DNA from: Ostrea edulis
Taxonomy: Eukaryota
DNA length: 64,000 nt
Direction: 5' to 3'
NCBI RefSeq assembly: GCF_947568905.1
Contig: NC_079169.1
Location: 87,544,001-87,608,000 of the forward strand
Shown here: in pieces, positions 1 to 50,031 of the stretch
Position numbering within the stretch: position 1 is the first letter of the stretch
Layout: every line of letters begins with the position of its first letter
Position numbers and translations under genes: made by a program
The notes under the pieces: model-generated
What the model saw: the letters and a program-made list of their open reading frames with translations, nothing else
What the model was told of the DNA's origin: nothing
Database searches by the model: none

Positions 1-850
1 TGGGAATATTTATATCTTGTGATCAGTTTCCTAAAAATTACTTTGTTTAATGCTACTCTGATTCTACGCACAGGTACTCTGAAGTTGATATATGTATCAA
101 GAATATGATGGAGTTCCTCCTTGACAGTATCTAAGTAGTCTTTGGTGATTAGGTCTTCCAACACTCTGTTGGAATTCCTATGGGTACGAATTGTACTCCT
201 TCACTAGCTGACATGTTTTTGCATTCTTATAAAGCAAATCTCTCCAAAAGCCTCTACATGAGAAGAAAACATATCGCTGTGACCTTCAACTCCACATTTA
301 GACAAATCGACGACGTTTTATCTATTAATGATACTCATTTTCATTCATATGTTGATTGGATATATTTATCCCAGTGAGTTCGAAGCAAGAAACACAACAA
401 AGTCTTCTACGTCTGCTTCCACTTGGATATTTTATTGAAGTTGATTGGAAACAGCAATGTAAAACTCAACAAACGAGATGACTTCAGCTTTTCCATCGTC
501 AACTTCCCGTAATCATGTAGCAATATTACAAAATCACCTGCATATGATATTTATGTCTTTCAACTGGTTCGATAAACAATAGCATCTTCTGCGTATGATA
601 ATTCTTAAATGGAGCCAGACTACTGACAAATAAGTTTTTGTTATAGTGGTTTCAATAATCTCGTTTAAATTCAGCATTTCGCAATTGTATTGTCGTTATA
701 ACGATCTAATTTACAACTACGATATGTGGGTAAAATGAACACTATCTGACTTGTTTGACACCATTCTTAGGCCGTTTTGGCTCACTGATTTTGACTACGG
801 ATCACTCTGTTTACCTGATCAAGATATAGAGCAAGATATATCGTAAGTAT
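1..850 (+). mobile_element. Decayed Penelope-like (Naiad-type) reverse transcriptase fragment, arm1 copy
   Basis: GIPMGTNC-P-LAD-FL and FR--DDVLS RT motifs (ORF 180-377), followed by degenerate RDDFSFSIVNFP; interrupted by stops and frameshifts. Confidence 0.85.
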
Positions 851-2180
851 CCCTTGACCCAATGCTCAAAATAATCTACAACAATATTTCAAACTTCTCT
901 ACCATTCCATAACACTCAGCTTCTCTTAAATCTTTGGCATTTTGTACAGAAGTACTGAATTGATTTAAAGAAAAAAATGAATTGATTTGTTAATTGTTTA
1001 TTGAACACATTCAAAACACAGAATACAAGTTAGAGGAAGGACATCTTTATACAGCATGGCGTACGTGAATCTCAGCAACACTACAAAACAATAGAATTAA
1101 CACAGCAATTATATATACTTTGGTATATTTATCACACAACTGATCTATATATATGTGTGTGTCAGAAAGTCACGATCTCCAGAGAATCAAACATAAAAGA
1201 TACAATGTCAAAGATATGTTGTGAAAACCAGCTTTCATTCAGTCTTCTAGAACAGTAATATTACAGGAGTGTACACGGAACAAATACTGCCTTCAATGAT
1301 TATTTTGTTGGGAGAATTAAATCAGAAATATGAAAAATGGCTAACACCTCACAAATGTTAAAGCAATTTGATAACAAATGTACACATTTGTATACCGTGG
1401 TGCCTGTAATATAGATTGATCTTAATTTAGTTGTTTAAAATATTAATCATCTAACATACTACTGGGAAATTATTGAACCAACATGTCAAGAGAACAAATA
1501 GAATTCATGAAATTCATATTATAAAGACTAATTTCGACATCTGAGTGAACGATATTAATCACAGAATAGCGGTAACACTATGTCATTTCAACAATTTAGA
1601 TTTATGGAACAGAAAATCACGATATATGCTCAATAAAATGATAATTTAATGTCCAATGGTCACCACAGTTACTGGATTAAATCTACTGATACAGTAATGA
1701 GACTTATGCTATAATTATGTCCCCGATACAGGCATGTTATCACTTCCTTCCATCATTATTTGAGTCGAAATTTTCATGACCTAACCCTTTTGTTCTCAAT
1801 TTGTAGACGTCTTGATATGTCAATTTGATCTTACCCTTATTTTAACACACCAACTTCACCCTCCTCTTATTTGTAAGGATCTTATCTAAATGCTTCATCT
1901 TCAATATCACCCTATTACCACTTCAATTTAAATCTCCCTTGGTCTTAATTGACCTTAACGGCGGTCATGTTGTACCTAGTATGCTTAAATTTCTAATGTG
2001 GTGTGTAGAGAGGAAATGAAGAATATTCTGAAAATTCCTTCTACACAGTAAATAAAATACCAACGAAAGAGAATTAGAATGATGATGGGACTACTTGGAT
2101 CAGAAAAGCAAGGCCATGTCTTAAGCTCAGGTGACTTCCATCAAAATGAAACTAGTGATATGGAAGAGAATGAATAAAAC

Positions 2181-3154
2181 CTACGCCATTTCACATATAT
2201 AATTGTTGAGATCGGTGCAAGGATCATCTGTCCACGTCATTACATAGCCTGGTTCATTTCGAAAGACTACACAATTTTCGTTTCCATATCTGTTGTTAGG
2301 CTGGATGGTACCCCAGTTGGTATAGGTAGCAGTTTTACCGGAGGATATCCAAACAAATGTATCTTCTTCGACGATATCAGTTAAACCAATGTAGAAACCA
2401 TGGTATCCTAATATGTAGACAAAGTTATCAATATGTAAGTGAATTCAAATAGGAATATCAAATATTTCATTGTGACAAGGGTATTCATTTACATTCTTTT
2501 TAAATAGAAATATTTGCTCTTGGAATAAACATTGAGGAATCACAAACCAGACTGTTTGACGGGGTTTTCAAGAAATTTCTGTGTCGCGACATCGTCCACT
2601 GTGGCCAAAGACGCAGTCCTGCCATACTGAGAACCAATTGCTTGGCAGAGTTTCTTAAGGAAAAGAAGAGAGTCTGTGTTATTCGTCATCAATTACAGCT
2701 TTGAGATTTTATGCAATATCTGTAACATGTCATGAATGACGATTCTAGAGTATATTTAATGAATGTAAGGACAGAGAAATGAATGTTTACCAGTGCTCCG
2801 GCAAGCGTCTCGTTGTCTTTGCTGAGGAAGAAACATCTGTCATTGTGTGCACTCCAGTTAGTGGGACAAACAGCGAATACTTCAATCAAAGATTAAAATA
2901 ATGTAATCATACATGTGTATGTCTGAAAACAAACCATATACCCCACCTCCCGAAACAGAAACTCAAATGAAACTAAAGGAAACTTTTCCAAGAATCCGAA
3001 TATTTGAAAAATGTAGAGTACTTCAAATGAAATTCACAAATGATTAAAATCAAAGAACAGTTTCTGCCATTCTTTAGTACTTGAATAGAATATGCATCCA
3101 AATAAACTTACCTGTGGTCAGTGCTGTGAGAAAGATGAGGAGCTGAATATTCAT
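2181..3154 (-). CDS. C-type lectin type A, copy A1. Four exons: 3154-3112, 2879-2791, 2653-2548, 2407-2181; ~154 aa, secreted, perlucin-like CTLD
   Basis: Signal peptide MNIQLLIFLTALTTG; CPTNWSAHNDRCFFLS; YIGLTD; WGTIQPNN; ENCVV; WTDDPC; YICE. All introns GT-AG with consistent phases. Confidence 0.92.
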
Positions 3155-4279
3155 TTTGGACGGTTGATTATTTGTAATCTGTAGAGAAACCAAGTTGGTG
3201 CACTTATATAGTGCTGCAATTTTGATAAGAAGTCACGGAGAGAAAGGTTATAATGTAGAACCTAAAGAAGAACACCATTCACATCTCCTAGGTGGATGAA
3301 GACCTTACAATCATCACGTTTAATTTAGTAGGCGTAAGATTTGACTACACGACATTAAAGGAAACGAAAATTATCAATATATACTGCATGACAACATGAT
3401 AACACTGTTTATCATAATCATTACATATTGGGGGAATTTGGTCCCAATTTTGATTTCTTTACAGGAGCAATAAAGGTTTGAGGGTGAATTCAAAACAGAA
3501 TGAAAAATATAACAATGCATGTGGGTTTGGATGAATGTAGGACATTAATTTCGAAGTACATAGCATGAACAAATGAAAATCATGTAACTTTCTTAATTCT
3601 ATAATTTGTAGTTGATAATCAGTATATACAATGTGTCGCAATAATAATTGTATTTAGATACCTCTGTGAGCATACTGTAACTCTCCCAGTCATTCACTGT
3701 TTGCAGTTGTATGTCCCGCTAGAATATTTTGCTGAATTAGAGGCACCACCAGCTTAAGGCAAAAAGCATCAGATTTAGGGTTTTTAATTCCGTTTCCATG
3801 ACTTTAAGATATCTTACGTTGATGAGTTGTATTTGTGGATATAAAAACACCTTTACTTAAGAAACGTAATGTAGACTATTTCGTTAATTTTATTTGTCTA
3901 AAGATATTTTATTTGCACTACTCTACATGGTATAAATTGGTATTTTTTAAAACAAATTTACTAGTGCACCATTTGCTTTGTACGTGGGTGAAAGTCGGTC
4001 AACCAAATCACGAAAACTAGAATATATGATATTTCAGTTTCCACTAACGAGAAAGAATTGCATATTTAGATAATCTGAAACGTGCATCACGTATAGGTAG
4101 TGGACATGACGTCTTGACAATGTTCTACATTGTGATCTTTCTCCGTCAACATAATCCTGTTTGATTATGTTCTATTTCCTTACCTTTCTTCACGAACCTA
4201 AAATCTTATCAAAATTACACCACTATATAAAAGCAAGAAATTGGTTTCTCTGCAGATCATTATTAATCAACCGTCCAAA
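3155..4279. promoter_or_regulatory. Divergent promoter region between lectins A1 and B1, with two TATA boxes (3204-3210 minus; 4224-4232 plus)
   Basis: TATATAA about 50 bp upstream of each ATG; both genes share the leader aaccgtccaaaATG. Confidence 0.7.
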
Positions 4280-5391
4280 ATGAATATCCAGCTCCTCATC
4301 TTTCTCGCAGCGATGACCACAGGTATGTTTATAAGGATGTTGATTGTATCATCATTAATATCAGCATTTTACCGCAATTTTTTTAAAAAGAGCCTTAAAT
4401 TACCAGGGACCGGATAAATTGGAGGTCACAGCTTACTAATAAATTTTTCTGTTTGCTTTTTCAAATTACTAAGAAAGATTAGAAATAAATGAATTTTATT
4501 TTCAGTTCTGCCTACTAACAATTCTGAACTCTCTTCTAGTGTTCGCTGCCTGTCCTGCACATTGGTCTGGACATAGGGACAAATGTTACTTCTTCAGTAG
4601 AGACAATGAGACGTTTTCGGACGCTCTGGTAAATATCCGTTATTCTCTTTCTACAAAAGACATTATTTCAAAGATAATCGTCCTTGATAAATGTCTTCAT
4701 GTGTGTAGAATGACGTCATCGCTTTCTTGCAGATACTCTGTGAAATGCTAGGAGTCCAGTACCGTAGACCTGCCTCCATTGCCACCATAGATGGCGCCAA
4801 CACACAAAACTATCTGGCCAACCTGATTAGGCACTCCGGTATGTCCATCTCCTTTCAAAACCCAAAACAGATACCTTTTCCCTTGTGATTGATATACATT
4901 AAGATCGACTCAAAACTATAATTGTACTCTACTCTGTCGTTCCATTACATTCCAGGATCTAATGCTTACTATATTGGTGTCAACGATATTGTCAACGAGG
5001 GCGAATTTGTATGGATTTCTTCTGGACAGAATGCCACTTATTTGAACTGGGGTCCCGACCAGCCCAACAACCGATGGGGAAATGAAAATTGTGTTGTCAT
5101 TAGAAACGATCCAGGTCAAGGGTTTGACATGACGTGGTCAGATGACCCCTGCACTGATCTGAACACGTATATCTGCGAAATGCCGTATGTTTTCACTTTT
5201 GTTTTATCATATTACATCCTTCAAAGATTTAGGTAGGGAATTATTGATATCATTTACATCTCATGATGTTGATATCGTCTTACTAAAACTAGTACGCATC
5301 GAATGTCGACCGGTCACACCCGCCGTGAGCCCTATATCTCGATCCCAGTCGATTATTTTACAGGTACCCCAGGTTGATTACAGATTCTTAA
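4280..5391 (+). CDS. C-type lectin type B, copy B1. Five exons: 4280-4322, 4540-4628, 4733-4838, 4956-5184, 5364-5391; ~164 aa
   Basis: Signal peptide MNIQLLIFLAAMTTG; CPAHWSGHRDKCYFFS; YIGVND; WGPDQPNN; ENCVV; WSDDPC; YICE. GT-AG introns. The short last exon is inferred from a conserved acceptor and stop. Confidence 0.9.
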
Positions 5392-6174
5392 TTTTGTCGG
5401 AGGCAGTTGCAGACGATATAAGTTTGATATTCTTGAATAAATGTGGTGAAATAAAGCAGCTTCTTGTATCTGTAGTAATACACAATTATCATCTCTGAAT
5501 TAAGATTTTCAATGCTTTGATTCAGGATATTACGTTTCACTAAAACCGTTCCAACTTTACCATTAGATCGCTTTATTCTTTCTAAATGCTTGATGTCGGA
5601 CATAATGATTGTTATTCCATCATAGCATCATGAACACCAATGTGGATTCCGTGAATTATCATGGTACATGTATATCGACTTCATGGATTATCGCTGTTTT
5701 ATAAGTTTTATTGCATCGTAAAATCATGTTAATATTTCTGTAGGAGTTTCTAAGAAGTGATACACATCTTTCAGCTTAGAAATAAAGCTATTCACATGTT
5801 TTTTTGTATTGTAGTGCTGCTGAGATTCACATTCCGATTGTTGGATAAAGAGTAATGCATTATTATTGTATTTTGTGTGTTATATGTATATACTGTACAA
5901 ATAAATTATCTTATTTTTTGTCTGCTAAATCTTTAAAAAATATGGTATTTATTCACATAATGTCAAATAATTATTTTCAAGAATGATTATACCTGAAAAA
6001 GGTATTCAAATAGAAAAGTCAAACTGATTAGAGGTTAAGTAAGATTCATAAAGATTGAATAGAGGTAAAGAAGAATTGTTACAAATTAACAGTAAATGTA
6101 TTCTGAGAGAAGGCAATCAACAGTTCATACGTATTGACAATGGGAATTCGATAGTACATACATATAGACACATG

Positions 6175-7859
6175 GATTGAGAGCAGACATTCAACTGTCA
6201 TACTAATCGAGACAAGATAATCAACTGTCATACAGATTGAGACAAGACAATCAACTGTTATACAGATTGAGACAAGATAATCGACAGTCATACAGAATGA
6301 GATAACACAATCAACTGTCATACAGATTGAGATAACACAATCAACAGTCATACAGAATGATATAAGACACAACCAACTGTCATACATATTGAGATAAGAC
6401 AACCAACTGTCATACAGATTGAGACAACATAATCAACTGTCATACAGATTGAGAAAAGACAATCAACTGTCATACAGATTGAGATAAGACACAATCAACT
6501 GTCATACAAATTGAAACAACATAATCAACTATCATACAGAACGCGATAAGATAATCAACAGTCATACAGAATGAGACAAGATAATTAACTGTCATACAGA
6601 ATGAGACAAGATAATTAACTGTCATACAGATTGAGACAAGATAATTAACTGTCATACAGATTGAGAAAAGATAATTAACTGTCATACAGATAGAGACAAG
6701 ATAATTATCTGTCAAACAGAATGAGATAAAATAATCAAATGTCATACAGATTGAGACAAGATAATTAACTGTCATACAGAATGAGACAATATAATTAACT
6801 GTCATTCAGATGGAGACAAAATAATTGTCATACAGAATGAGATAAAATAATCAACTGTCATACAGATTGAGACAAGATAATCAACTGTAATACATTTTAA
6901 GGCAAGATAATTAACTGTCATGCAGATTGAGATAAGATAATCAACTGTTATACAAATTGAGACAAGATAATCAACTCTAATACATTTTGAGACAAGATAA
7001 TTAACTGTCATACAGATTGAGACAAAATAATTAACTGTCATACAGATTGAGAAAAGATAATTAACTGTCATACAGATAGAGACAAGATAATTATCTGTCA
7101 TACAGAATGAGATAAGATAATCAACTGTCATACAGATTGAGACAAAATAATTAACTGTCATACAGAATGAGATGATATAATTAACTGTCATACAGATTGA
7201 GACAAGATAATTAACAGTCATACATAATGAGATAAGACAGGTAACTGTCATACAGATTGAGATAAGACAATCAAAAGTCATACAGAATGAGATAAGATAA
7301 TCAACTGTCATACAGATTGAAACAACATAATCAACTCTCATACAGTTTGAAATAAGAGAATTAAATGTCATACAGATTGAGACAAAAATAATCAACACTC
7401 ATACAGATTGAAACAAGATAATCAACTGTCATACAGATTGAGATAAGACAATCAACAGTCATACAGATTGAGACAAGATAATCAACCGTCATACAGAATG
7501 AGATAAGATAATTAACTGTCATACAGATTGAGACAAGATGATTAACTGTTATACATATTGAGACAAGATAATTAACTGTCATACAGATTGAGAAAAGATA
7601 ATTAACTGTCATACAGATTGAGACAAGATAATTAACTGTCAAACAGATTGAGACAAGATAATTAGCTGTCATACAGATTGAGACAAGATAATTAACTGTA
7701 ATACAGATTGATACAAGATAATTAACTGTCACACAGATTGAGATAAGATAATCAACAGTCGTACAGAGTTAGATAAGACAATCGATAGTCATATAGAATG
7801 AGATAAGACAATTAACTGTCATACAGATTGAGATAAGATAATCAACTGTCAAACAGATT
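6175..7859. repeat. 30-bp satellite array (~56 units; AGATAATCAACTGTCATACAGATTGAGACA)
   Basis: Clear 30-bp periodicity; produces spurious 10-aa repeat ORFs. Confidence 0.95.
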
Positions 7860-9261
7860 ATAATTATAATTTAATGCAAAAGACAAATGTACTAACATTC
7901 GTTTATTAAAATGTACATAAATTTTGAAAAATACAAGTCAACTGAGCCGCAAAATGACTCACTTAGCATGACGAAGCGTCTAGCTGTGAAGGTAGCAATA
8001 TTAGTTCTTTTGAGCCTATTTATCAAATTATTGTAAATGTAGTAATTGAAGGTGAAGTTTGAAGTTCGTTGGGACAGAAAATATGTGTAGGCTATGAATG
8101 CAATGCGTATTTTGCTGCCCTTAAAGATCGACTTTGAAGTAGACTACATGAAAACTTACCCTTGCATGCAACGTTGTCGCTAATAGTAAGTCCGACACAA
8201 GAAATATACAAACAAGTGATTAATTGCGATCCACAGCTCAATGTGACTGACGTCATCTGATATGAAATATGACGTATGATTGTTTTTTTGAAAGGCAGAT
8301 CAAGCAATGAAGCAACCCCCTTCCCCAAGGAGAAATGTATATCAAAATGAGCAGGCTTCTGTTTACTTGGTAAATAATTAATTCGAATATAATTTCTTTG
8401 GCTTTACCTATTATTCGACCATGACACAGAGAAAGATCTTTTCCAACAGTGATTTGCGTACAAGTAGATGGTAATTGACAAGGAGAAAAAAATATGTATA
8501 TTAAACCAAAATATCGTATTGCACGCGTTGACTTTCTATTCCAAATGCAAGGCCCAAAAGATTGCTGCAATGTAAATTTCAAGAGAGAAAAATAGTTCCG
8601 GCAACTGGTTGTCAAGGGGCATGTCCCCATACCAAACCAGGTTATACAAAAATAATCTGCGCTCCTCAATTTAAATTTGACCAATCAGAGACTAGAATAC
8701 AATATGAATTAAATTATAAGAGAATAATTTCAGTGTATTGTATGTAGTCATTAACAAGAGTTGAAAATATATTTCAAAGAATAGATTAAAACGATTGATA
8801 TTTCGCACAACCATCAAAATAATTTCGACGTCAAATAAATTCAAACATATTTTGGAGTATGAAATGATATTTTTCAGACATGCATAGGTATTTATAAATG
8901 CACATTGAAAACAATTTGTCAGTAAAAATATTATATTCTCGTAATCATTTATTTTGTAGTTTCTTTGCATTAAAATAGTTAATTCTCTAACTAATATCAC
9001 CTCAGCTGCCGAAAGTTCAAATTGAATATATACTACACTACACCAAAATGCACTTTATCATAAGGTGTAAACCGACTACACCGGGTATATAACGGTGTTA
9101 TGAAATGAAGACCAACCATACAGATTGAGAGGAAACAAACGACAGCCATAGAGATTGAGAGGAAACAAACGACAGCGATACAGATTGAGACAGGACAATC
9201 AACAGTCATAGTGATTTATACATGTTAACGAAAATGTAAACACATGAAGGTAAAGATTGAT

Positions 9262-9661
9262 TTTGATGCACCAGATGCGCATTTCAACAAATAATGTATC
9301 TTCATTGATGCTCAACCGAAATGTTTGAAATTCGAAATAGCAATGAAGTTTTAGAGCTATTTTAGGGGGAAACAGAGTGCCTAAAAAGTGGAGTAAAATT
9401 CATCTAAGGATAAGAGCTATGCGTGAGGGAGATAATCCTTAATATTCAAATTAATTTCTAAATTTTATAACAGGAATTAAATATACATCCGTATTTTCAA
9501 GCTAGTAACGAAGTATTTAGCTACTGGGCTGTAGAGACTCTGGGGGACTAACAGTCCACCAGCAGAGGTCTCGACGCAGGGGTCATAATGTAAAACTTAT
9601 ACGGTACCAATTTTGATGTACCAGATGCGCATTTCGACAAATAATGTCTCTTCCGTGATGC
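9262..9661 (-). mobile_element. Non-LTR retrozyme monomer flanked by two minimal hammerhead motifs, at the centre of palindrome 1
   Basis: Predicted cleavage sites at 9274 and 9624 are 350 nt apart. Both cores are mutated (ATGAAGA, CGGAAGA). Matches copies at 28.6, 38.5, 50.0 and 56.4 kb. Confidence 0.82.
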
Positions 9662-9693
9662 TATTTCGGATTTCAAACATTTCGGTTGAGCAT

Positions 9694-9737
9694 GCAAGGT
9701 GAAGATAACGAACAGTGATCAATCTCATAACTCCTAC
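9694..9737 (-). mobile_element. 44-bp Naiad 3' tail inserted into a third, inverted hammerhead copy
   Basis: gcaaggtgaagataacgaacagtgatcaatctcataactcctac lies between gagcat and aatgaagatacattatttgtc. Confidence 0.8.
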
Positions 9738-10324
9738 AATGAAGATACATTATTTGTCAAAATGCGCATCTGGTGCATCAAAATTGGTACCGTGTAAGTT
9801 TTACATCAATCTTTACCTCGATGTGTTTATATTTTCGTTAACATGTATAAATCACTATGACTGTCGACTGTCCTGTCTCAATCTGTATCGCTGTCGTTTG
9901 TTTCCTCTCAATCTGTATGGCTGTCGTTTGTTTCCTCTCAATCTGTATGGATGGGCTTCATTTGATTACACCGCTGTATACCTGGTGTAGTCGGTTCACA
10001 CCTTATGATAAAGTGCATTTTGGTGTAGTGTAGTATATATTCAATATGGACGTTCAGCAGCTGAGGTGATATTAGTTAGAGAATTAACTATTTTAATGCA
10101 AAGAAACTACGAAATAAATAATTACGATAATATGATATTTTTAATTACAAATTGTTTTCAATGTGCATTTATAAATACCTATGCATGTCTGAAAAATATC
10201 ATTTCATACTCCGAAATATGTGTGGATTTATTTAACGTCGAAATTATTTTGATGGTTGTGCGAAATATCAATCGTTTTAATCTATTCTTTGAAATATATT
10301 TTCAACTCTTGGTCTTGACTACAT

Positions 10325-29267: not shown

Positions 29268-29399
29268 ATAAAACACTTTTTTGTAAAGCAAAATGTTTTG
29301 TATTTGATCTTGTATCCATGTTGTGGAGCCGACACTTTCAGGTATCGGGTGTTGTTAGAACTTAGTGCTTATATATATTTATATCTTAACTTAGCTCTT

Positions 29400-38856: not shown

Positions 38857-38887
38857 ATTTCGGATTTCAAACATTTCGGTTGAGCAT

Positions 38888-38931
38888 GCAAGGTGAAGAT
38901 AACGAACAGTGATCAATCTCATAACTCCTAC
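38888..38931 (-). mobile_element. 44-bp Naiad 3' tail inside a hammerhead copy (same event as 9694-9737)
   Basis: Identical insertion point and sequence. Confidence 0.8.
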
Positions 38932-39527: not shown

Positions 39528-41676
39528 GCGGCCGTTTCACTAAGCGATCGTAGATCGTAAACGTACGATTACGTTTAAGATCATTTGACTCGCACGTATA
39601 CGAGCGTTTCACGAAACCTATCGTAGTCGTAACACTTACGATTGCGATTTACGTCTGACTTTTTAGAACTCTTTTCTCTATGGAGGTAGATTTAAAATTA
39701 ATCCTACCATGAAAAGAAATATTCATTCATTATTTCCTCATGGTTTTAAACATATCCTTATCGTCTGCAGTAACCCATGCAAGTTGTCAACAAAAATAAT
39801 GGAAATTTTGAGCCCGATCTCTAGTGTAACGTAAAGAAAATTCCTAGAATGTTTAAACAATTGATAGAATAATTTTTATTGACTTTCATGTAACTAAAAT
39901 GGGGGTGGGGGTGATATAAGAAATAACATAAAAGATTTACATTTTAGAATTTTAAATGCCATGTATCGATCTGCTCATGTGAGCCAAATTTCCATCAATA
40001 AGTAAACTATGTTCAACGGATTAAAAAAAATGAATAAGAAAATGAAATTATATTGATAAAAGCAAATAATAAATGAAAATAAAATTGCACACAAGAATAG
40101 GAGATTTTATCCTGCATCAAACCATGGATATGTACGTACTCCGGCGTTAAATCATTGTTGTAAAATAAGCTGTAACACTAATGACATATCTAGTCACTTA
40201 TTTGTATAAATTTCAAACAAATCATGGGCTCAATTTGTCTCTAAAATGACTTGAAATTTATTTTCCCCATGCGTTTGTCTTTTATATATATATTTTTCCG
40301 TTTAGGCATGTAAGCATATGCTAACTTTCGTCTTTACGTGATGATGTATAATCCAGATCATTTATTAAAAATTATTATTGATATTACACTTTATGATGAT
40401 TGATTTTTATATTGTTTAACGTCCCTCTCGTAAATTTTCACTAATATGGAGACGTCACCATTGCCGGTGAAGGGCTATAAAATGTAGGCCTATACTCGGC
40501 GCTTACGGCCATTGGGCAGGGAGGGATCTTTTTCATGGTACACCTGCTGTGACACGGGACCTCAGTGTTTGCAGTCTCATCCGAAGGACCGCCCCATTTA
40601 GTCGCCTCCTTCGATAAGCAAGAGGTACTGAGGACCTATTCTAATCCGGATCCCCACGGGAGTGCACTTTATAAAAAGGGGTCGGAACCCCAAGGGTCCG
40701 ATAATGACCCTTCCCTTGTCTGTGTATACATATAGGTCTAGTCTGTATGTTTAATTTCTAACGACCTTCATAAAACTACAGAAACAATCCACTTGCAAAA
40801 TTGGGATTTTAACCCCTCTCCCATTACCAAATCATTTTATTATCATATTTTCCTTAAAATGTGCATGTATTATGCAGTTAGTCAGTTGCATCAAAGGTAT
40901 TGATCTGACGGGGGGGAAAAAGCTGAATACGTCGAATCGCAACGTCTCGGATCATTAAATCAACTGTTTCTAAAGAAATTTAATTTCTGAACATGAGAAT
41001 AATGTCTTGGATCCTCTCTAATGTTAAATATACATGTGATCTAACGGTGATGCAGGCATATGTAGCTATCTCCCCATATCTGTTCTCGTTATTATTACAT
41101 GCAAAGTTTGATATATTGACTAACCCCCCCCCCCCCCCCCTCACTTTATAAAATATGAATTCTTGCATTGTCTTTATATTTATTTCAGCAAACTGGTAAC
41201 AAGGGCTAGGCCCGTTTTGGACCCGAACTTTGTGATACAATGAATTTATACTCTATTTGTGGTATCACAGAGCCCGGGCCCAAAACGGACTTGACCCCTG
41301 TGAGACTGACATTTCTGTGGTCGTGCGTAACAAAGAAGGATAACTCTAATTGATTTAAGATTCGGGCTCGGACTGTACAATATTTTTGTGCAAAAGCAGA
41401 CTGCAAGTCATTGTGATTGTTTTCTTCCTCCAAAGTATAAACAAACTCAGTCAGGTAAATACTACCACAAAATGATCTCAGGCGGGCCAGCATGGCGGCC
41501 ATATTGCTCATTTACGTTCATGTAGGAGCACTTACGATAGCCCTAGACCACTCGTAGGGTTACGATCAATATTGATCGGAAATCGCAAATCGTAACTTTT
41601 AGTGAAACGGTCTTACGTGCTACGTTTACATTTAAGTCTACGTTTACGATCTACGATCGTTTAGTGAAACGGCCGC
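39528..41676 (-). mobile_element. Non-autonomous PIF/Harbinger element, 2149 bp, CAG target-site duplication
   Basis: TIR GCGGCCGTTTCACTAA(G/A)CGATCGTAGATCGTAAACGTA; TSD cag at 39525-39527 and 41677-41679; weak transposase-like N-terminal ORF 41206-41511. Confidence 0.85.
40394..40661 (-). mobile_element. SINE (bivalve Meta/RUDI-like core inferred) inside the Harbinger element
   Basis: Reverse complement of the 57140-57405 element. Confidence 0.75.
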
Positions 41677-42165
41677 CAGGTGCCTAGGAGGAGTAAGCAT
41701 CCTCTGTTGACCGGTCACACCCGCCGTGAGCCCTATATCCTGATCAGGTAAACGGAGTTATCCGCAGTCAAAATCAGTGTGCCAAAAACGGCTTAACAAT
41801 CGGTATGAAACACGTCAGACAGCATTTGACCCAATGTGAGGTTGTATTGACGAACCAGATCGTTATAACGACCATAGAATTTACGAAATGCTGACTTCAA
41901 TCGAGACTGTTGAAATCCCTGTACCATCAACTTGTTTGTCAGTAGCTTACCTCGATTTAAAAACTGACTATACCCAGAACAAGCTCTTGCATATCGAATC
42001 AGTTGAGATATATAAACACCATATGCAGGTGATAATGGAATATTGCTACACAAATATGAGAAATTGACGATGGAGAAACTGAAATCATCCCGTTTGTCAT
42101 ACAGTTGAGTCGTCAGTTTGCCGTTAATGTCTACTTTCAATAAAATATCTAAGTATGAAGCAGAA

Positions 42166-44995
42166 TCTTGTCTCAATTTGTATGACAGTTGATTTTCTTG
42201 TCTCAAACTGTATGACAGTTGATTATTTTGTCTCAATCTCTATGACTGTTGATTATCTTGTCTCAAACTGTATGACAGTTGATTATTTTGTCTCCATCTC
42301 TATGACTGTTGATTATCTTGTCTCAAACTGTATGACAGTTGATTATTTTGTCTCAAAATGTATTACAGTTGATTGTCTTATCTCAATCTGTATGACTGTT
42401 AATTATCTTGTCTCAATCTGTATGACTGTTGATTATCTTGTCTCATTCTGTATGACAGTTGATTATTTTGTCTCAATCTGTATGACTGTTGATAATCTTG
42501 TCTCAAACTGTATGATAGTTGATTATTTTGTCTCAAAATGTATTACAGTTGATTGTCTTATCTCAATCTGTATGACTGTTAATTATCTTGTCTCAATCTG
42601 TATGACTGTTGATTGTCTTGTCTCATTCTGTATGACTGTTGATTATTTTGTCTCAATCTGTATGACTGTTAATTATCTTGTCTCAATCTGTATGACTGTT
42701 GATTATCTTGTCTCAATCTGTATGACTGTTGATTATCTTGTCTCAAACTGTATGATAGTTGATTATTTTGTCTCAAAATGTATTACAGTTGATTGTCTTA
42801 TCTCAATCTGTATGACTGTTAATTATCTTGTCTCAATCTGTATGACTGTTGATTATCTTGTCTCATTCTCTATGACAGTTGATTATCCTGTCTCAATCTG
42901 TATGACTGTTGATTATCTTGTCTCATTCTGTATGACAGTTGATTATTTTGACTCAATCTGTATGACTGTTAATTATCTTGTCTCAATCTGTATGACTGTT
43001 GATTATCTTGTCTCATTCTGTATGACAGTTGATTATTTTGTCTCAATCTGTATGACAGTTGATTATCTTGTCTCATTCTGTATGACAGTTGATTATCTTG
43101 TCTCAATCTGTATGACAGTTGATTATCTTATCCCATTCTGTATGATTGTTGATTATCTTATCTCAATCTGTATGACTGTTGATAATCTTGTCTCAATCTG
43201 TATGACTGTTGATTATCTTGTCTCAAACTGTATGACAGTTGATTATTTTGTCTCAATCTCTTTGACTGTTGATTATCTTGTCTCAAACTGTATGACAGTT
43301 GATTATTTTGTCTCAATCTCTATGACTGTTGATTATCTTGTCTCAAACTGTATGACAGTTGGTTGTCTTATCTCATTCTGTATGACTGTTGATTATCTTA
43401 TCTCAATCTGTGTGACAGTTGATTATCTTGTCTCAAACTGTATGACAGTTGATTTTTTTGTCTCAAAATGTTTTACAGTTGATTGTCTTATCTCAATCTG
43501 TATTACTGTTGATTATCTTGTCTCAATCTGTATGACTTTTGATTCTTTTGTCTCAATCTGTATGACTGTTGATTATCTTGTCTCAATCTCTATGACTATT
43601 GATTATCTTGTCTCAATCTGTATGACAGTTGATTATCTTATCCCATTCTGTATGTTTGTTGATTAGTTTGTCTCAATCTGTATGACTGTTGATTATCTTG
43701 TCTCAATCTGTATGACAGTTGATTATCTTGTCTCAATCTGTATGGCTGTTGATTAGTTTGTCTCAATCTGTATGACTGTTGATTATCTTGTCTCAATCTG
43801 TATGACTGTTGATTAGTTTGTCGCATTCTGTATGACAGTTGATTATGTTGTTTCAATCTGTATGACTGTTGATTATATTATATCAATCTGTATGACAGTT
43901 AATTATTTTGTCTCAATCTGTATGACAGTTGATTATATTGTCTCAATCTGTATGACTGTTAATTGTCTTATCTCATTATGTATGACTGTTGATTATCATG
44001 TCTCAATCTTTATTAGAGTTGATTATCTTGTCTCAATCTGTATGACTGTTGATTATTTTCTCTCAATCTGTATGACAGTTGATTATCTTGTCTCAATCTG
44101 TATGACTGTTAATTGTCTTATCTCATTATGTATGACTGTTGATTATATCGTCTCAATCTGTATGACAATTGATTGTCTTATCTCATTCTGTATGACAGTT
44201 GATTGTCTTATCTCATTATGTATGACTGTTAATTATCTTGTCTCAATCTGTGTGACAGTTGATTATCTTGTCGCAATCTGTATGACAGTTGATTATCTTG
44301 TCTCAATCTGTATGACTGTTAATTGTCTTATCTCATTATGTATGACTGTTGATTATATCGTCTCAGTCTGTATGACAGTTGATTGTCTTATTTCATTCTG
44401 TATGACAGTTGATTATCTTGTCTCAATCTGTATGACAGTTGATTATATTGTCTCAATCTGTATGACAGTTGATTATCTTGTCTCAATCTGTGTGACAGTT
44501 GATTATATTGTCTCAATCTGTATGACAGTTGATTATCTTATCTCATTCTGTATGACAGTTGATTATCTTGTCTCAATCGGTATGACAGTTGATTATATTG
44601 TCTCAATCTGTATGACAGTTGATTGTCTTATCTCAATCTGTATCACTGTTGATTATCTTGTCTCAATCTGTATGATAGTTGATTATCTTATCTCATTCTG
44701 TACAAGAGTTGATTATTTTGTCTCATTCTGTATGACAGTTGATTATTTTATCTCATTCTGTATGAGAGTTGATTATTTTGTCTCATTCTGTATGAGAGTT
44801 GGTTATTTTGTCTCATTCTGTATGAGAGTTGATTATTTTGTCTCATTCTGTATGCCTGTTGATTGTCTTATCTCAATCTGTATGCCTGTTGATTTTCTTA
44901 TCTCATTCTGTATGACAGTTAATTCTCTTGTCTCAATCTGTACAACAGTTGAATGTCTGCTCTCAATTTCTATGACAGTCGATTATCGTGTGTCA
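42166..44995. repeat. 30-bp satellite array, arm4 (~94 units), with local higher-order repeats
   Basis: Variant unit tctcaaaatgtattacagtt recurs at ~42351, 42531 and 42771. Confidence 0.95.
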
Positions 44996-45770
44996 ATATA
45001 TATGCACTATCGAATTCCCATTGTCAATACGTATGAACTGTTGATTGCCTTCTCTCAGAATACATTTACTGTTAATTTGTAACAATTCTTCTTTACCTCT
45101 ATTCAATCTTTATGAATCTTACTTAACCTCTAATCAGTTTGACTTTTCTATTTGAATACCTTTTTCAGGTATAATCATTCTTGAAAAGAATTATTTGACA
45201 TTATGTGAATAAATATCATATTTTTTAAAGATTTAGCAGACAAAAAATAAGATAATTTATTTGTACAGTATATACATATAACACACAAAATACAACAATA
45301 ATGCATTACTCTTTATCCAACAACCGGAATGTGAATCTCAGCAGCACTACAATACAAAGAAAACATGTGAATAGCTTTATTTCTAAGCTGCAAGATGTGT
45401 ATCACTTCTTAGAAACTCCTACAGAAATCTTAACAACATTTTACGATGCAATAAAACTTATAAAACAGCGATAATCCACGAAGTCGATATACATGTACCA
45501 TGATAATTCACGGAATCCACTTTGGTGTTCATGGTGCTATGATGGAATAACAATCATTATGTCCGACATCAAGCATTTAGAAAGAATAAAGCGATATAAT
45601 GGTAAAGTTGGAACGATTTTAGTGAAAAGTAATATCCTGAATCAAAGCGTTGAACATTTAAATTCAAAGATAATAATTGTGTATTACTACAGATACAAGA
45701 AGCTGCTTTATTTCACCAGATTTATTCAAGAATATCAAACTTATATCGTCTGCAACTGCCTCCGACAAAA

Positions 45771-47288
45771 TTAAGAATATGTAATCAACCTGGGGTACCT
45801 GTAAAATAATCGACTGGGCTCGAGATATAGGGCTCACGGCGGGTGTGACCGGTCACTGCATATGGTGTTTATATATCTCAATTGATTCGATATGCAAGAG
45901 CTTGTTCTGGGTTTAGTCAGTTTTTAAATCGAGGTAAGCTACTGACAAACAAGTTGATGGTACAGGGATTTCAACAGTCTCGATTGAAGTCAGCATTTCG
46001 CAAATTCTATGGTTGTTATAACGACCTACTTCGTCAGTACAACCTCGCATTGGGTCAAATGCTGTCTGACGTGTTTCATACCGATTGTTAAGCCGTTCTT
46101 GGCACACTGATTTTGACTGCAGATAACTCCGTTTGCCTGATCAGGATATAGGGCTCACGGCAGGTGTGACCGGTCAACAGGGGATGCTTACTCCACCTAG
46201 GCACCTGATCCCACCTCTGGTGTGTCCAGGGGTCCGTGTTTTCCGAACTATCTATTTTGTATTGTTTATAGGAGTTATGAAATTGATCACTGTTCGTTAT
46301 CTTCACCTTGCATGCTTACTATTTTAAGTAAGACTATATCAACATCATGAGATGTAAATGATATCAATATTTCCATACATAAATCCTTGAAGGATGTAAT
46401 GTGATAAAACAAAAATGAAAACATACGGCATTTCGCAGATATACGTGTTCAGATCAGTGCAGGGGTCATCTGACCACGTCATGTCAAACCCTTGACCTGG
46501 ATCGTATCTAATGACAACACAATTTTCATTTCCCCATCGGTTGTTGGGCTGGTCGGGACCCCAGTTCAAATAAGTGGCATTCTGTCCAGAAGAAATCCAT
46601 ACAAATTCGCCCTCGTTGACAATATCGTTGACACCAATATAGTAAGCAGTAGATCCTGGAATGTAATGGAACGACAGAGTAGAGTAAACTTATAGTTTTG
46701 AGTCTATCTTAATGTATATCAATCACAAGGGAAAAGGTATCTGTTTGGGTTTTGGATGGAGATGGACATACCGGAGTGCCTAATCAGGTTTGCCAGATAT
46801 TTCTGTGTGTTGGCGCTATCTATGGTGGCAATGGAGGCAGGTCTACGGTACTGGACTCCTAGCATTTCACAGAGTATCTGCAAGAAAGCGATGACGTCAT
46901 TCTACACGCATGAAGGCATTAATCAAGGTCTTTGAAATAATGTCTTTTATAGAAAGAGAATAACGGATATTTACCAGAGCGTCCGAAAACGTCTCATTGT
47001 CTCTACTGAAGAAGTAACATTTGTTCCTATGTCCAGACCAGTGTGAAGGACAGGCAGCGAACACTAGAAGAGAGTTCAGAATTGTTAGTAGGCAGAATTG
47101 AATATTTTTTATCTTTCTTAGTAATTTGAAAAAGCAGAGAAATTGATTAGTAACCTGTGATCTCCGATTTCCCCGGTACCCCTTTCTTTATTGCGGTAAA
47201 ACGTTTATACTAATAATGATACAATTAGCATCCTTCTAAACGTACCTGTGGTCAGTGCTGCGAGAAAGATGAGGAGCTGGATATTCAT
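45771..47288 (-). CDS. C-type lectin type B, copy B4. Exons 47288-47246, 47063-46975, 46877-46772, 46655-46427, 45798-45771
   Basis: Open spliced frame (CPSHW, GSTAYY and IRYDP variants); Naiad insertion in the last intron. Confidence 0.88.
45854..46311 (+). mobile_element. 5'-truncated young Naiad in intron 4 of B4
   Basis: ORF 45882-46091 is the RT C-terminus; ends in tatcttcaccttgc. Confidence 0.88.
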
Positions 47289-48441
47289 TTTGGAAGGTTG
47301 ATTAATAATGATCTGCAGAGAAAGCAATTTCTTGCTTTTATATAGTGGTGTAATTTTGATAAGATTTGAGGTTCGTGAAGAAAGGTAAGGAAACAGAACC
47401 TAATCAAACAGGACTATGTTGACGGAGAAAGATCACAATTTAGAACATTGTCAAGACGTCGTGTCCACTACCTATACGTGATGCATGTTTCAGATAATCT
47501 AGATATGCAATTCTTTCTCGTTAGTGGAAACTGAAATATCATATATTCTAGTTTTCGTGATTTGGTTCACCCACTTATAAAGCAAATGGTGCACTAGTGA
47601 AACTCTTTTTAAAACAAAAATACCAATTTATACTATAGAGTGGTTCAAATAAAATAAGATTAGAAAAATGAAATTAACGAAATAATCTACATCACGTTTC
47701 TTAAATAAAGGTTTTAAACATTATTCTGTTTCTGGGGGTTTTATATCCACAGATACAACTCATCAACGTAAGATATCTTAAAGTCATGGAAACGGAATTA
47801 AAAATCTAAATTTGATGCTTTTTGCCTTAAGTTGGTGGTGCCTCTAATTCAGCAAACTAGTCTCGCAGGTCGTACAACTGCAAACAGTGAATGACTGGGA
47901 GAGTTACAGTATGCTCACAGAGGTATCTAAATACAAGTATTACTGCGACACATTGTATATACTGATTATCAACTAGAAATTATAAAATAATTCATTAAGA
48001 AAGTTACATGATTTTCATTTGTTCATGCTGTGTACTTCGAAATTAATGTCCTACATTCATCCAAATCCACATGCATTGTTATATTTTTCATTCCGTTTTG
48101 AATTCGCCGTAAAACCTTTATTGCTCCTGTAAAGAAATCAAAATTGGGACCAAATTCCCCCAATATGTAATGATTATGATAAACAGTGTTATCATGTTGT
48201 CATGCAGTATATATTGATAATCTTCGTTTCCTTTCACCCAATGTCGTGTAGTCAAATCTTACGCCTACTAAATTAAACGTGATGATTGTAAGGTCTTCAT
48301 CCACCTAGGAGATGTGAATGGTGTTCTTCTTTAGGTTCTACACTATAAACTTTCTCTCCGTGACTTCTTATCAAAATCGCAGCACTATATAAGTGCACCA
48401 ACTTGGTTTCTCTACAGATTACAAATAATCAACCGTCCAAA

Positions 48442-49413
48442 ATGAATATTCAGCTCCTCATCTTTCTCACAACACTGACCACAGGTAAGTTTATTTGGAT
48501 GCATATTCTATTCAAGTACTAAAGAATGGCAGAAACTGTTCTTTGATTTTAATCATTAGTGAATTTCATTTGAAGTACTCTACATTTTTCAAATATTCAC
48601 ACTCTTGGAAAAGTTTCCTTTAGTTTCATTTGAGTTTCTGTTTCGGGAGGTAGGGTATATGGTTTGTTTTCAGACCTACACATGTATGATTACATGATTT
48701 TAATCTTTGATTGAAGTATTCGCTGTTTGTCCCACTAACTGGAGTGCACACAATGACAGATGTTTCTTCCTCAGCAAAGACAACGAGACGCTTGCCGGAG
48801 CATTGGTAAACATCCATTTCTCTGTCCTTACCTACATTAAATCTACTCTAGAATCGTCATTCATGACATGTAACACAGATTGCAACAAATCTCAAAGCTG
48901 TAATTGATGACGTATAACACAGACTCTTCTTTTCCTTAAGAAACTCTGCCAAGCAATTGGTTCTCAGTATGGCAGGACTGCGTCTTTGGCCACAGTGGAC
49001 GATGTCGCGACACAGAAATTTCTTGAAAACCCCGTCAAACAGTCTGGTTTGTGATTCCTCAATGTTTATTCCAAGAGCAAATATTTCTATTTAAAAAGAA
49101 TGTAATGTAATGCCCTTGTCACAATGAAATATTTGATATTCCTATTTGAATTCACTTACATATTGATAACTTTGTCTACATATTAGGATACAATGGTTTC
49201 TACATCGGTTTAACTGATATCGTCGAAGAAGATACATTTGTTTGGATATCCTCCGGTAAAACTGCTACCTATACCAACTGGGGTACCATCCAGCCTAACA
49301 ACAGATATGGAAACGAAAATTGTGTGGTCTTTCGAAATGAACCAGGCTATGTAATGACGTGGACAGATGATCCTTGCACCGATCTCAACAATTATATATG
49401 TGAAATGGCGTAG
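48442..49413 (+). CDS. C-type lectin type A, copy A4. Exons 48442-48484, 48717-48805, 48941-49046, 49187-49413
   Basis: Open spliced frame; QPN and WTD motifs. Confidence 0.92.
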
Positions 49414-50031
49414 GTTTTATTCATTCTCTTCCATTTCACTAGTTTCATTTTGATGGAAGTCACCTGAGCTTAAGAGACGGGCTTGCTTTTCTGATCCAAG
49501 TAGTTCCATCATCATTCTAATTCTCTTTCGTTGGTATTTTATTTACTGTGTAAAAGGAATTTCCAGAATATTCTTCATTTCTTCTATAGAAACCAAATTA
49601 GAAATTCAAACCAACTAGGTATAAACGTACGCGGTGAAGGTAAATTCAAACCAAGGGGATTTAAGTTGAAGTGGCAAGACCTTTACCAATAAGGGGAAGC
49701 TAAAGTTGGTGTGTTAAGATAAAGGTTGGGTCAAATTGATGTATTAAGACACCTATAATTGAGAACCAAAGGGTTAGGCCATGAAACGTTCTACTCAAGC
49801 AATGATGAAAGGAAGTGTTTTAAGACGCGGGCATTGGGGATATTAGTGGAGTAAAAGTTTCATTACTGTATTAGTAGATTTACTCGGGTACGTTTGGTGG
49901 CCATTGGACATTTAATTATCATTTTATTGAACATATATCATTGATTTTTTGTTTCATAACTATAAATTGTTGGAAATGGTATTGAATCACTGCCATTTTG
50001 TTATCGATATTGATTACCCAAATGTTAAAAT

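What the first reader, a model, noticed from the sequence alone, without database searches (positions are those of the whole stretch)
1..50030. Eight lectin genes arranged as a doubled giant palindrome
One block (Naiad remnant, lectin A(-), lectin B(+), 30-bp satellite, unique flank) occurs four times in alternating orientation. Diagnostic sites group arm1 with arm3 and arm2 with arm4: A exon 4 CAT versus AAT, B donor gtatgt versus gtacgt, and B exon 3 GGC versus AGC. This implies an inverted duplication first, then duplication of the whole palindrome with a ~29.5-kb period. Large gene-bearing palindromes can amplify and homogenise immune or biomineralisation genes by arm-to-arm conversion; that role here is inference.
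Basis: partly seen in the sequence, partly recalled or inferred. Interest (0 to 1): 0.8.

Follow-up and report, generated by a model that had tools for sequence, protein, structure and literature searches.

The report
Alternating inverted array of oyster lectin genes
A flat-oyster chromosome carries at least five alternately flipped copies of a block holding two small secreted C-type lectin genes; it is a real but old and diverged duplication cluster, not a palindrome kept uniform by copying between its arms.

Summary
The window is Ostrea edulis chromosome OX387709.1, with window position 1 at record position 87,544,001.

- **Structure.** Four arms in + - + - order are real, each with a divergent C-type lectin pair (A 164 aa, B 166 aa, five exons) and a 30-bp satellite.
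- **Fifth arm.** Sequence fetched to the left shows a fifth arm (-) with an intact B and a frameshifted A. That makes ten genes, nine intact. All nine are already in RefSeq, four of them inside two chimeric models.
- **Assembly gap.** The N gap lies inside the non-coding tail of arm 2. Its two sides match points 49 bp apart in arm 3, so they are collinear.
- **History.** Arms 1 and 3 are sisters (96-99% bootstrap), and the non-palindromic centre lies in direct orientation (98-99%). This favours tandem duplication of an inverted pair. Divergences are unequal, though (arm 1 vs 3 2.6%, arm 2 vs 4 5.6%), and the order among the minus arms is unresolved.
- **No homogenisation of the genes.** Partner arms differ by 3.5-6.2%, and the tree that pairs them is rejected. 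Only about 0.8 kb of the arm 2/arm 3 tails is near-identical. The genes show purifying selection.
- **Open point.** Whether unit 2 is a haplotig could not be settled, because the public contigs give no copy number. The sequence evidence makes it unlikely.

Modest interest.

The parts
1..9307 (+). Arm 1. Contains a retroelement RT remnant (about 1-830), gene A1, gene B1, the satellite, a flank (7871-8694) and an inner inverted segment (8739-9307).
   Evidence: The arm ends at window position 1, where retroelement fragments begin.
1047..3154 (-). Lectin A1, 164 aa. Exons 3154-3112, 2879-2791, 2653-2548, 2407-2185, 1080-1047.
   Evidence: The protein is identical to residues 1-154 of XP_048730081.2 and to XP_055998493.1. 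Pfam Lectin_C 61 bits.
4280..5848 (+). Lectin B1, 166 aa. Exons 4280-4322, 4540-4628, 4733-4838, 4956-5184, 5815-5848.
   Evidence: It matches XP_055998490.1. Pfam Lectin_C 55.6 bits.
6175..7859 (.). 30-bp satellite of arm 1 (56 copies).
9308..9736 (.). Centre of palindrome 1|2. It overlaps a copy of a roughly 300-bp repeat (9260-9653) that is also found at 28560-29267, 38454-38849, 50030-50322 and 56351-56605.
   Evidence: 8739-9307 against 10327-9737, 90.5%.
9737..23210 (-). Arm 2, including the N gap at 22977-23116. Insertions: retroelement fragment 10323-10878, satellite block 10918-11296, a 2.1-kb insert 15582-17697 in B2 intron 1, and retroelement fragment 18304-18714.
   Evidence: Collinearity across the gap.
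14256..17934 (-). Lectin B2, 166 aa. Exons 17934-17892, 15565-15477, 15372-15267, 15149-14921, 14289-14256.
   Evidence: It matches XP_055998491.1.
12170..13930 (.). 30-bp satellite of arm 2.
19505..21632 (+). Lectin A2, 164 aa. Exons 19505-19547, 19780-19868, 20004-20109, 20250-20472, 21599-21632.
   Evidence: It matches XP_055998494.1.
23211..29262 (.). Spacer of the tail-to-tail pair 2|3. Contains flank F (23324-23557), a 2.8-kb Penelope-like retroelement on the - strand (about 23553-26400) and a tandem 302-bp repeat (28560-29267).
29263..38501 (+). Arm 3.
30683..32795 (-). Lectin A3, 164 aa. Exons 32795-32753, 32514-32426, 32288-32183, 32042-31820, 30716-30683.
   Evidence: An RNA contig joins exon 3 to exon 4 and runs on into exon 5 letters.
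33944..35506 (+). Lectin B3, 166 aa. Exons 33944-33986, 34198-34286, 34390-34495, 34613-34841, 35473-35506.
   Evidence: An RNA contig joins 34841 to 35473 with GT..AG ends. In RefSeq it forms the first part of the chimeric model XP_055998012.1.
35815..37054 (.). 30-bp satellite of arm 3.
38502..38930 (.). Centre of palindrome 3|4, overlapping a copy of the same roughly 300-bp repeat (38454-38849). The copy carries a hammerhead-like core at 38826-38849 (-).
38931..51526 (-). Arm 4. Well conserved to 50031, then a 1.2-kb insert, then a diverged tail holding A4 exon 5. Other insertions: 39528-41677 and retroelement fragment 45856-46313. It lacks the 0.8-kb flank that arm 2 has.
42165..45004 (.). 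30-bp satellite of arm 4 (95 copies).
45313..47288 (-). Lectin B4, 166 aa. Exons 47288-47246, 47063-46975, 46877-46772, 46655-46427, 45346-45313.
   Evidence: It matches XP_055998492.1.
48442..51338 (+). Lectin A4, 164 aa. Exons 48442-48484, 48717-48805, 48941-49046, 49187-49409, 51305-51338.
   Evidence: In RefSeq it forms the second part of the chimeric model XP_055998012.1.

Best explanation
This is a germline segmental-duplication cluster in Ostrea edulis (OX387709.1, about 87.534-87.596 Mb).

The basic module holds two paralogous five-exon genes for small secreted single-domain C-type lectins. A is 164 aa, B is 166 aa, and they are 64% identical. The genes sit head to head around a 1.1-kb shared upstream region, so the pair is itself an old small inverted duplication. 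Beside B lies a 30-bp satellite, and beside A a retroelement remnant.

Inferred history:
1. The module was inverted-duplicated, which gave a + lineage and a - lineage.
2. The inverted pair, with its non-palindromic centre and right flank, was then amplified in tandem with a period of about 25-30 kb. This gave the present order: arm 0 (-), 1 (+), 2 (-), 3 (+), 4 (-). The leftmost unit is partial.
3. The copies have since diverged independently by 2.5-7%, collecting insertions of Penelope-like elements and a roughly 300-bp repeat.

Nine genes stay open under purifying selection, and one (A0) carries a frameshift. Exchange between partner arms is limited to the non-coding tails of arms 2 and 3.

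Shown: the structure, the gene models, splicing of A (exons 3-4) and B (exons 4-5), the sister relation of arms 1 and 3, and the direct orientation of the centre. Inferred: the order of events, secretion, sugar binding and any immune role.
For: Structure
- Self-alignment.
- The fifth arm lies in L002, 18,960 bp left of the window with an identical 13,154-bp overlap.
- tblastn finds exactly ten lectin gene copies from -18.9 to +64 kb.

Genes
- Uniform exon lengths of 43/89/106/223-229/34 nt, with all splice sites GT-AG.
- Pfam Lectin_C at 61 and 55.6 bits against a cut-off of 22.6.
- Best solved relatives are mannose-receptor and Mincle C-type lectin domains, E 1e-22 to 1e-14.
- RefSeq proteins match A2, A3 (identical to A1), B1, B2 and B4. 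Two chimeric models cover A1+B0 and B3+A4.
- RNA contigs of run X19 confirm the A exon 3-4 and B exon 4-5 joints. A exon 4 is held by four RNA runs of one study.

Selection
- pN/pS is 0-0.42 for A and mostly 0.08-0.65 for B. Synonymous divergence is similar to intron divergence.

History
- The (1,3) clade has 96-99% support, and the alternatives are rejected.
- 13|24 sites number 41, against 16 and 12.
- The centre lies in direct orientation at 98-99%.
- The - arms share a right flank: 23324-23502 matches 50572-50753 at 95.6%, and 23461-23557 matches window -1334..-1240 at 92.8%.

Against an assembly artefact
- The gap is collinear within one arm.
- There is no allelic overlap across the gap; only 72-79% retroelement similarity is seen.
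- The would-be allelic pairs differ by 2.6-7%, against a reported genome-wide heterozygosity of 1.02% (PMC9679249).
- The locus is held by DNA runs of 9 studies.
Against: - A single tandem duplication predicts equal divergence of 1v3 and 2v4. The observed values are 2.6% and 5.6%.
- The order among arms 0, 2 and 4 is unresolved. With one 130-bp patch included, (0,4) is favoured and (2,4) is rejected at AU 0.025.
- Informative sites form a mosaic.
- In the outer 1.5 kb, arms 2 and 3 group together at 12:3:1. This needs an extra conversion event or a more complex origin.
- The junction between the two full units is exactly where the assembly has its gap.
- Read depth could not be obtained. Only Logan contigs were served, mostly one contig per place with mixed arm-specific letters, so copy number is untested.
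- Secretion and ligand are not tested.
Confidence: 0.65

Rival explanations
1. Unit 2 (arm 3, centre, arm 4) is the other haplotype of unit 1, placed in tandem at a scaffold join. In this reading each real haplotype has only three arms (0, 1, 2).
For: - The only gap (22977-23116) sits at the junction of the two units.
- The start of the right-hand contig (a 94-bp arm tail, flank F, a Penelope-like element, then arm 3) parallels the layout 'arm 0 tail, F, Penelope fragments, arm 1'.
- The 1v3 divergence of 2.6% is within reach of very polymorphic bivalve loci.
- The reads tool gave no depth.
Against: - The two sides of the gap match arm 3 at points only 49 bp apart, as expected if one arm copy runs through the gap. 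Arm 0 has no counterpart of the 94-bp piece.
- The supposed alleles differ by 2.6% (1v3), 5.6% (2v4), 7% (flank F) and 11-20% (retroelement pieces). Reported genome heterozygosity is 1.02%.
- Arm 4 is no closer to arm 2 than arm 0 is (4.4% against 5.6%).
- The spacers are 2 kb against 6 kb and are not collinear.
Confidence: 0.13
2. The array arose by repeated fold-back (mirror) inverted duplications, as in breakage-fusion-bridge cycles or template switching. Each arm would then be copied from its neighbour.
For: - Orientation alternates strictly over five arms.
- Arms 2 and 3 end at the same point of the module (23210 and 29263) and are 99% identical there.
- In the outer 1.5 kb the neighbouring arms 2 and 3 group together at 12:3:1.
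- Repeats and inverted retroelement pieces sit at the junctions.
Against: - Over the genes, arm 3 groups with arm 1, not with its neighbour arm 2. Topologies that pair neighbours are rejected (AU 1e-5 to 0.04).
- The centres of 1|2 and 3|4 are direct copies, not mirror copies, of each other.
Confidence: 0.08
3. It is an actively homogenising palindrome system, in which arm-to-arm gene conversion keeps the lectin genes alike. This is the role the reader proposed.
For: - Exons are 2-4 times less diverged than introns.
- The A1 and A3 proteins are identical.
- There is a near-identical 0.8-kb tract between arms 2 and 3.
Against: - Partner arms differ by 3.5% and 6.2%.
- The (1,2)(3,4) tree is rejected.
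- A1 and A3 differ at 6 synonymous sites and no non-synonymous site. Synonymous divergence equals intron divergence, which is the mark of purifying selection rather than conversion.
- The near-identical tract is non-coding.
Confidence: 0.05

Closest known systems
Tandem and inverted expansions of C-type lectin genes in bivalve genomes
   Same: The genes encode single C-type lectin domain proteins with a hydrophobic N-terminus, clustered by local duplication. C-type lectin is among the domains over-represented in families expanded in O. edulis (PMC9679249).
   Different: Here the exact architecture is resolved: five alternately oriented modules, each an A/B head-to-head pair with a satellite. 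The word-based protein search found no relatives outside this locus. That search has limited reach, so this does not show absence.
Ampliconic gene-bearing palindromes of mammalian sex chromosomes
   Same: Inverted arms of about 9-13 kb that carry genes, around short spacers (0.43 kb and 6 kb). There is local evidence of arm-to-arm exchange next to one spacer.
   Different: Over the genes the arms are 3.5-6.2% diverged rather than more than 99% identical, and partner arms are not each other's closest relatives. The locus lies on a chromosome of a species without known sex chromosomes (from general knowledge, not tested here).
Complex inverted or tandem insertion structures of Penelope-like elements (Naiad clade) and their hammerhead-bearing non-autonomous repeats
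   Same: Penelope-like fragments in inverted and tandem order beside (TA)n, and roughly 300-bp repeats with a hammerhead-like core, sit at the arm ends and centres. This matches the structural habits described in PMC8557442.
   Different: These elements only mark the junctions. The arms themselves are host genes. No test shows that the elements caused the rearrangements.

Membership tests
C-type lectin-like domain proteins (Pfam PF00059) | Domain match above the curated cut-off. | tested here: met
   A scores 61.0 bits and B 55.6 bits against a cut-off of 22.6. The exon-4 ORFs alone score 45-47 bits. PDB relatives reach E 1e-22.
C-type lectin-like domain proteins (Pfam PF00059) | Conserved cysteine framework (long form, six Cys). 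| tested here: met
   Read directly from the translations. The six Cys sit in the contexts CPTNW, RCFF, KLCQ, NENCVV, DPCTD and YICEM, in all nine intact copies.
C-type lectin-like domain proteins (Pfam PF00059) | Calcium and sugar site motifs (EPN or QPD, plus WND). | tested here: inconclusive
   All copies have QPN and WTD (A) or WSD/WTD (B). These are variant motifs, so ligand and calcium dependence cannot be read from the sequence.
Palindromes homogenised by arm-to-arm gene conversion | Long inverted arms around a short spacer. | tested here: met
   Arms of about 9-13 kb. Spacers are 430 bp (1|2 and 3|4) and 6 kb (2|3).
Palindromes homogenised by arm-to-arm gene conversion | Near-identity of partner arms (more than 99%). 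| tested here: not met
   Substitution divergence is 3.5% for 1v2, 6.2% for 3v4 and 3.4% for 2v3. The exception is 0.8-1.0% over 29263-30062 against the arm 2 tail.
Palindromes homogenised by arm-to-arm gene conversion | Partner arms are each other's closest relatives. | tested here: not met
   The (1,2)(3,4) topology is rejected at AU 1e-5 to 1e-49 over the genes. Only the outer 1.5 kb groups arm 2 with arm 3, at 12:3:1 sites.
   2-6081 matches 29655-35739. 7871-10041 matches 37066-39235 (98.1%). 10135-10432 matches 39231-39528 (99.3%). 10429-10878 matches 41677-42126 (98%). All are on the + strand.
   The (1,3) clade has 96-99% support. The split of {1,3} from {0,2,4} is present, but the order inside {0,2,4} changes when one 130-bp patch is removed.
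   1v3 is 2.6% and 2v4 is 5.6%. Arm 4 is about 19% diverged in one 400-bp window.
   Only Logan contigs were available. They give no copy number and mostly one contig per place. Indirect sequence evidence favours one haplotype.
Naiad clade of Penelope-like elements (the 'Naiad remnant') | An RT preceded by an N-terminal GIY-YIG nuclease, with (TA)n targets and no canonical hammerhead. | tested here: inconclusive
   - RT: only a sub-threshold RVT_1 hit (E 0.0015, 18.7 bits against 29.6), plus Atlas neighbours with RVT_1 or DUF8422.
- Nuclease: a GIY-YIG-like stretch is seen by eye in the upstream ORF, with no Pfam hit.
- Target: (TA)n flanks the element.
- Hammerhead: Rfam finds none at its gathering scores anywhere in the window.
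- The features are as listed in PMC8557442.

The most novel reading that the evidence does not exclude
The alternating array is a standing recombination substrate. In this reading, Penelope-like elements and their hammerhead-bearing repeats at every junction promote repeated inversion, unequal exchange and short conversion tracts. The oyster would thereby shuffle and vary the copy number of a lineage-specific pair of secreted lectins between individuals. That would make it an autosomal invertebrate counterpart of ampliconic palindromes, used for immune diversity.
Probability: 0.1. Interest if true: 0.6.

Novelty: new member of a known kind. Interest (0 to 1): 0.33.

Why it matters
It gives a base-level anatomy of how one oyster lectin family expanded, through three nested levels of duplication:
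- an A/B head-to-head pair;
- an inverted pair of modules;
- tandem amplification of that pair.

It shows that an alternating-orientation array need not be kept uniform by conversion. It also explains two chimeric RefSeq models (A1+B0 and B3+A4), which arise because neighbouring arms put an A gene and a B gene on the same strand.

For oyster immunogenetics it defines nine near-identical lectin genes. Their paralogue-specific sites are needed to read expression or association data correctly.

Tried and rejected
- **Read test of the haplotig rival.** I laid three DNA runs and one RNA run on arm 3 to look for arm 1-private and arm 3-private letters in each individual. The runs are Logan contigs, mostly one contig per place with a mosaic of arm states, and only 40 of 195 difference rows are shown. 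Presence or absence and copy number cannot be read, so I dropped the test as inconclusive.
- **Rfam search for hammerheads** at the centres and junctions, whole window at gathering scores and three stretches at E <= 1. No hammerhead was found; the hits were weak microRNA-like hairpin and other sub-threshold matches, some over (TA)n. A core-motif search did find five copies.
- **Pfam on the retroelement ORFs**. Only one sub-threshold RT hit.
- **Word-based homologue searches for A and B**. Only proteins of this locus and two Logan fragments were returned. I did not run the exhaustive protein search, because the family is already named by Pfam and no claim here rests on absence of relatives.
- **Mirror duplication about the 2|3 axis, and trees pairing palindrome partners.** Both were rejected by the tree tests and by the orientation of the centre.
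- **Rooting the arm tree with the A/B paralogues.** Too few informative coding sites, so not attempted.

Full report
**Identity of the window**

A B-type exon-4 ORF finds the RefSeq protein 'lectin BRA-3-like [Ostrea edulis]' on a 93,534,300-bp record. Exact look-ups place the genes on OX387709.1 of assembly GCA_947568905.1. The fetched locus L002 overlaps the window identically over 13,154 bp. This puts window position 1 at record position 87,544,001 and supplies 18,960 bp to the left of the window.

**The observation**

Self-BLAST shows four copies of one block in + - + - order (with the satellites masked).
- Arm 1: 1-9307.
- Arm 2: 9737-23210.
- Arm 3: 29263-38501.
- Arm 4: 38931-50031, with a diverged tail to about 51526.

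Each arm holds a retroelement remnant, a lectin gene A, a lectin gene B on the other strand, a 30-bp satellite and an inner flank. Arms 1 and 3 are direct repeats 29,653 bp apart.

Identities, counting indels:

| Pair | Identity |
|---|---|
| 1v3 | 95.5% |
| centre, unit 1 against unit 2 | 98-99.3% |
| 1v2 | 93.8-97.2% |
| 2v3 | 93.9-96.9% |
| 2v4 | 91.9-96.4% |
| 1v4 and 3v4 | about 90% |

Over all four-arm columns the informative sites split 41 (13|24), 16 (14|23) and 12 (12|34).

**The gap**

The only N run is 22977-23116. Position 22976 aligns to arm 3 position 29404, and 23117-23210 aligns to 29355-29263 at 94.7%. The two sides therefore match points 49 bp apart on one uninterrupted arm. 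The gap sits inside the non-coding tail of arm 2, 1.3 kb beyond the last A2 exon, and the flanks are collinear. There is no direct, allele-like overlap between the sequence before and after the gap, only 72-79% similarity of retroelement pieces.

**The genes**

A and B share one structure of five exons (43, 89, 106, 223 or 229, and 34 nt). All introns are GT-AG. A is 164 aa and B is 166 aa, and they are 64% identical.

Their first exons and 5' leaders are 86% identical in inverted orientation (3095-3230 against 4339-4204), and their fourth exons are 73% identical. The head-to-head A/B pair is therefore itself an old inverted duplication.

Both proteins are C-type lectin domains.
- Pfam scores are 61 and 55.6 bits.
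- The best solved relatives are mannose-receptor and Mincle domains.
- Both have a hydrophobic N-terminus and six cysteines.
- The site motifs are the variants QPN and WTD/WSD.

All eight in-window genes are open.

RNA contigs of one public run join A exon 3 to exon 4, and B exon 4 to exon 5, exactly at the predicted sites. Four RNA runs of one study hold A exon 4.

RefSeq already carries all of these genes. A2, A3, B1, B2 and B4 are single models. A1+B0 and B3+A4 are two chimeric models, named 'C-type lectin domain family 4 member E-like' and 'macrophage mannose receptor 1-like'. The chimeras arise because neighbouring arms place an A gene and a B gene on the same strand.

**A fifth arm**

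Left of the window, at window coordinates -10161 to -2021 (L002 15176-23316), lies a fifth copy in - orientation.
- Its B gene (B0) is intact and equals the B part of XP_048730081.2.
- Its A gene (A0) has a one-base deletion in exon 3 and reads into stops.
- Its satellite is degenerate, at 71-76% identity.

tblastn finds exactly ten lectin copies between -18.9 kb and +64 kb. The array is therefore five arms and ten genes, nine of them intact, not a doubled palindrome of eight.

**History**

On 3,099 columns shared by the five arms (A gene to B exon 4), arms 1 and 3 are sisters with 96-99% bootstrap support. Every tested topology without that pair is rejected by the AU test: (1,2)(3,4) at 1e-5 to 1e-49, and the topologies with (2,3) at 0.04 or less.

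The order among the - arms 0, 2 and 4 is not resolved.
- With all columns, (0,4) is best.
- After removing one 130-bp patch that carries 17 of the 21 '04' sites, (0,2) is best and (2,4) is not rejected (AU 0.36).

The centre between the arms has non-palindromic parts, a retroelement fragment and a satellite block. These lie in the same orientation in both units at 98-99%. The - arms also share a right flank in direct orientation. Together this favours tandem amplification of an existing inverted pair and excludes a mirror copy about the 2|3 axis.

The history is not a single clean event.
- 1v3 differ by 2.6%, but 2v4 by 5.6% and 0v2 by 4.4%.
- Arm 4 has a 400-bp window about 19% diverged from all other arms, and it has lost most of its tail.
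- Arm 0 is 13-22% diverged downstream of B0.

**Homogenisation**

Partner arms differ by 3.5% (1v2) and 6.2% (3v4). Exons are less diverged than introns (A 0.9-1.7% against 2.8-5.1%). Synonymous divergence (A 1.9-5.6%, B 0.9-10%) is as high as intron divergence, while non-synonymous divergence is 0-2%. A1 and A3 give identical proteins yet differ at six synonymous sites. This is purifying selection, not conversion.

The one sign of exchange between partner arms is at the tail-to-tail junction. Arms 2 and 3 differ by only 0.8-1.0% over the outermost 0.8 kb, against 4-5% further in. In the outer 1.5 kb the site patterns are 12 (01|23), 3 and 1. That tract is non-coding retroelement remnant.

**Is the second unit a haplotig?**

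The junction of the two full units coincides with the gap, so this rival had to be weighed.

Against it:
- The gap is collinear within one arm.
- Arm 0 has no counterpart of the 94-bp piece that opens the right-hand contig.
- The would-be allelic pairs differ by 2.6-7%, and their retroelement parts by 11-20%. The published k-mer heterozygosity is 1.02% (PMC9679249).
- Arm 4 is no closer to arm 2 than arm 0 is.

For it:
- The layout at the start of the right-hand contig parallels that left of arm 1.
- I could not obtain read depth. The public runs are served as Logan contigs, which mostly give one mosaic contig per place.

DNA runs of nine studies hold half or more of the arm 3 words. This shows that the locus is present in many samples, but not its copy number. 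I put this rival at about 0.13.

**Transposons**

The 2|3 spacer holds a 2.8-kb retroelement whose RT lies at its 3' end, with an upstream ORF showing a GIY-YIG-like stretch, beside (TA)n. This fits the Naiad layout described in PMC8557442. It rests on a sub-threshold Pfam hit and reading by eye, so the label 'Naiad' is plausible but not shown.

A roughly 300-bp repeat sits at both palindrome centres and at the outer ends of arms 3 and 4. Five copies carry a hammerhead-like core, CTGAAGAG...CGAAA, giving 6 matches against 0.85 expected. Rfam reports no hammerhead.

**Verdict**

The structure is real, was correctly seen, and is larger than reported. It is an old, diverging segmental-duplication cluster of already annotated lectin genes. 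Its origin as 'inverted pair, then tandem copies' is supported in outline. The proposed homogenising role is not supported for the genes. It is a new member of a known kind and of modest interest.

Noticed in passing
window 9260-9653, 28560-29267, 38454-38849, 50030-50322, 56351-56605; L002 15702-16047: A roughly 300-bp repeat family sits at both palindrome centres, at the outer ends of arms 3 and 4, and inside the tail of arm 0. Five copies carry the core CTGAAGAGACATTATTTGTCGAAA (a hammerhead-like CUGANGA...GAAA), giving 6 matches against 0.85 expected. Rfam reports no hammerhead there, at gathering scores or at E <= 1.
   Followed up: partly
window 1047-3154 with L002 20352-22114; window 33944-35506 with 48442-51338: Two RefSeq proteins are chimeras of neighbouring arms. 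XP_048730081.2 joins A1 to B0, and XP_055998012.1 joins B3 to A4, in both cases through the 5' leader of the second gene. Whether read-through transcripts exist was not tested.
   Followed up: partly
L002 18225-19198 (window -6043..-5070): The A gene of the fifth arm (A0) has a one-base deletion in exon 3 (105 nt instead of 106) and reads into stop codons. Its splice sites are intact.
   Followed up: yes
window 34961-34999: A stretch of about 35 bp has a word depth of 2e5 to 1.4e6 in three DNA runs, with many loose ends on both sides. It is the end of a very abundant mobile element. The same point carries the 450-bp retroelement insert in arm 4 (45856-46313).
   Followed up: no
window 15582-17697: A 2.1-kb insert private to arm 2 lies inside intron 1 of B2. 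It has short ORFs with no Pfam hit, and its origin is unknown.
   Followed up: no
window 39528-41677: A 2.1-kb insert private to the centre of unit 2. Part of it (40409-40661) resembles 57141-57395.
   Followed up: no
window 62912-63124: An ORF with a Sushi (SCR) domain (Pfam 23.8 bits against 20.7), inside the gene-like region 56.7-63.1 kb to the right of the array.
   Followed up: no
window 57556-57984: An unrelated 28-bp satellite of 15 copies.
   Followed up: no
window 33500-33650 (arm 1 3856-3983): A 130-bp patch in the A-B intergenic region where arms 0 and 4 share 17 differences against arms 1, 2 and 3. It behaves as a single replacement or conversion event and alone flips the tree of the - arms.
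   Followed up: partly
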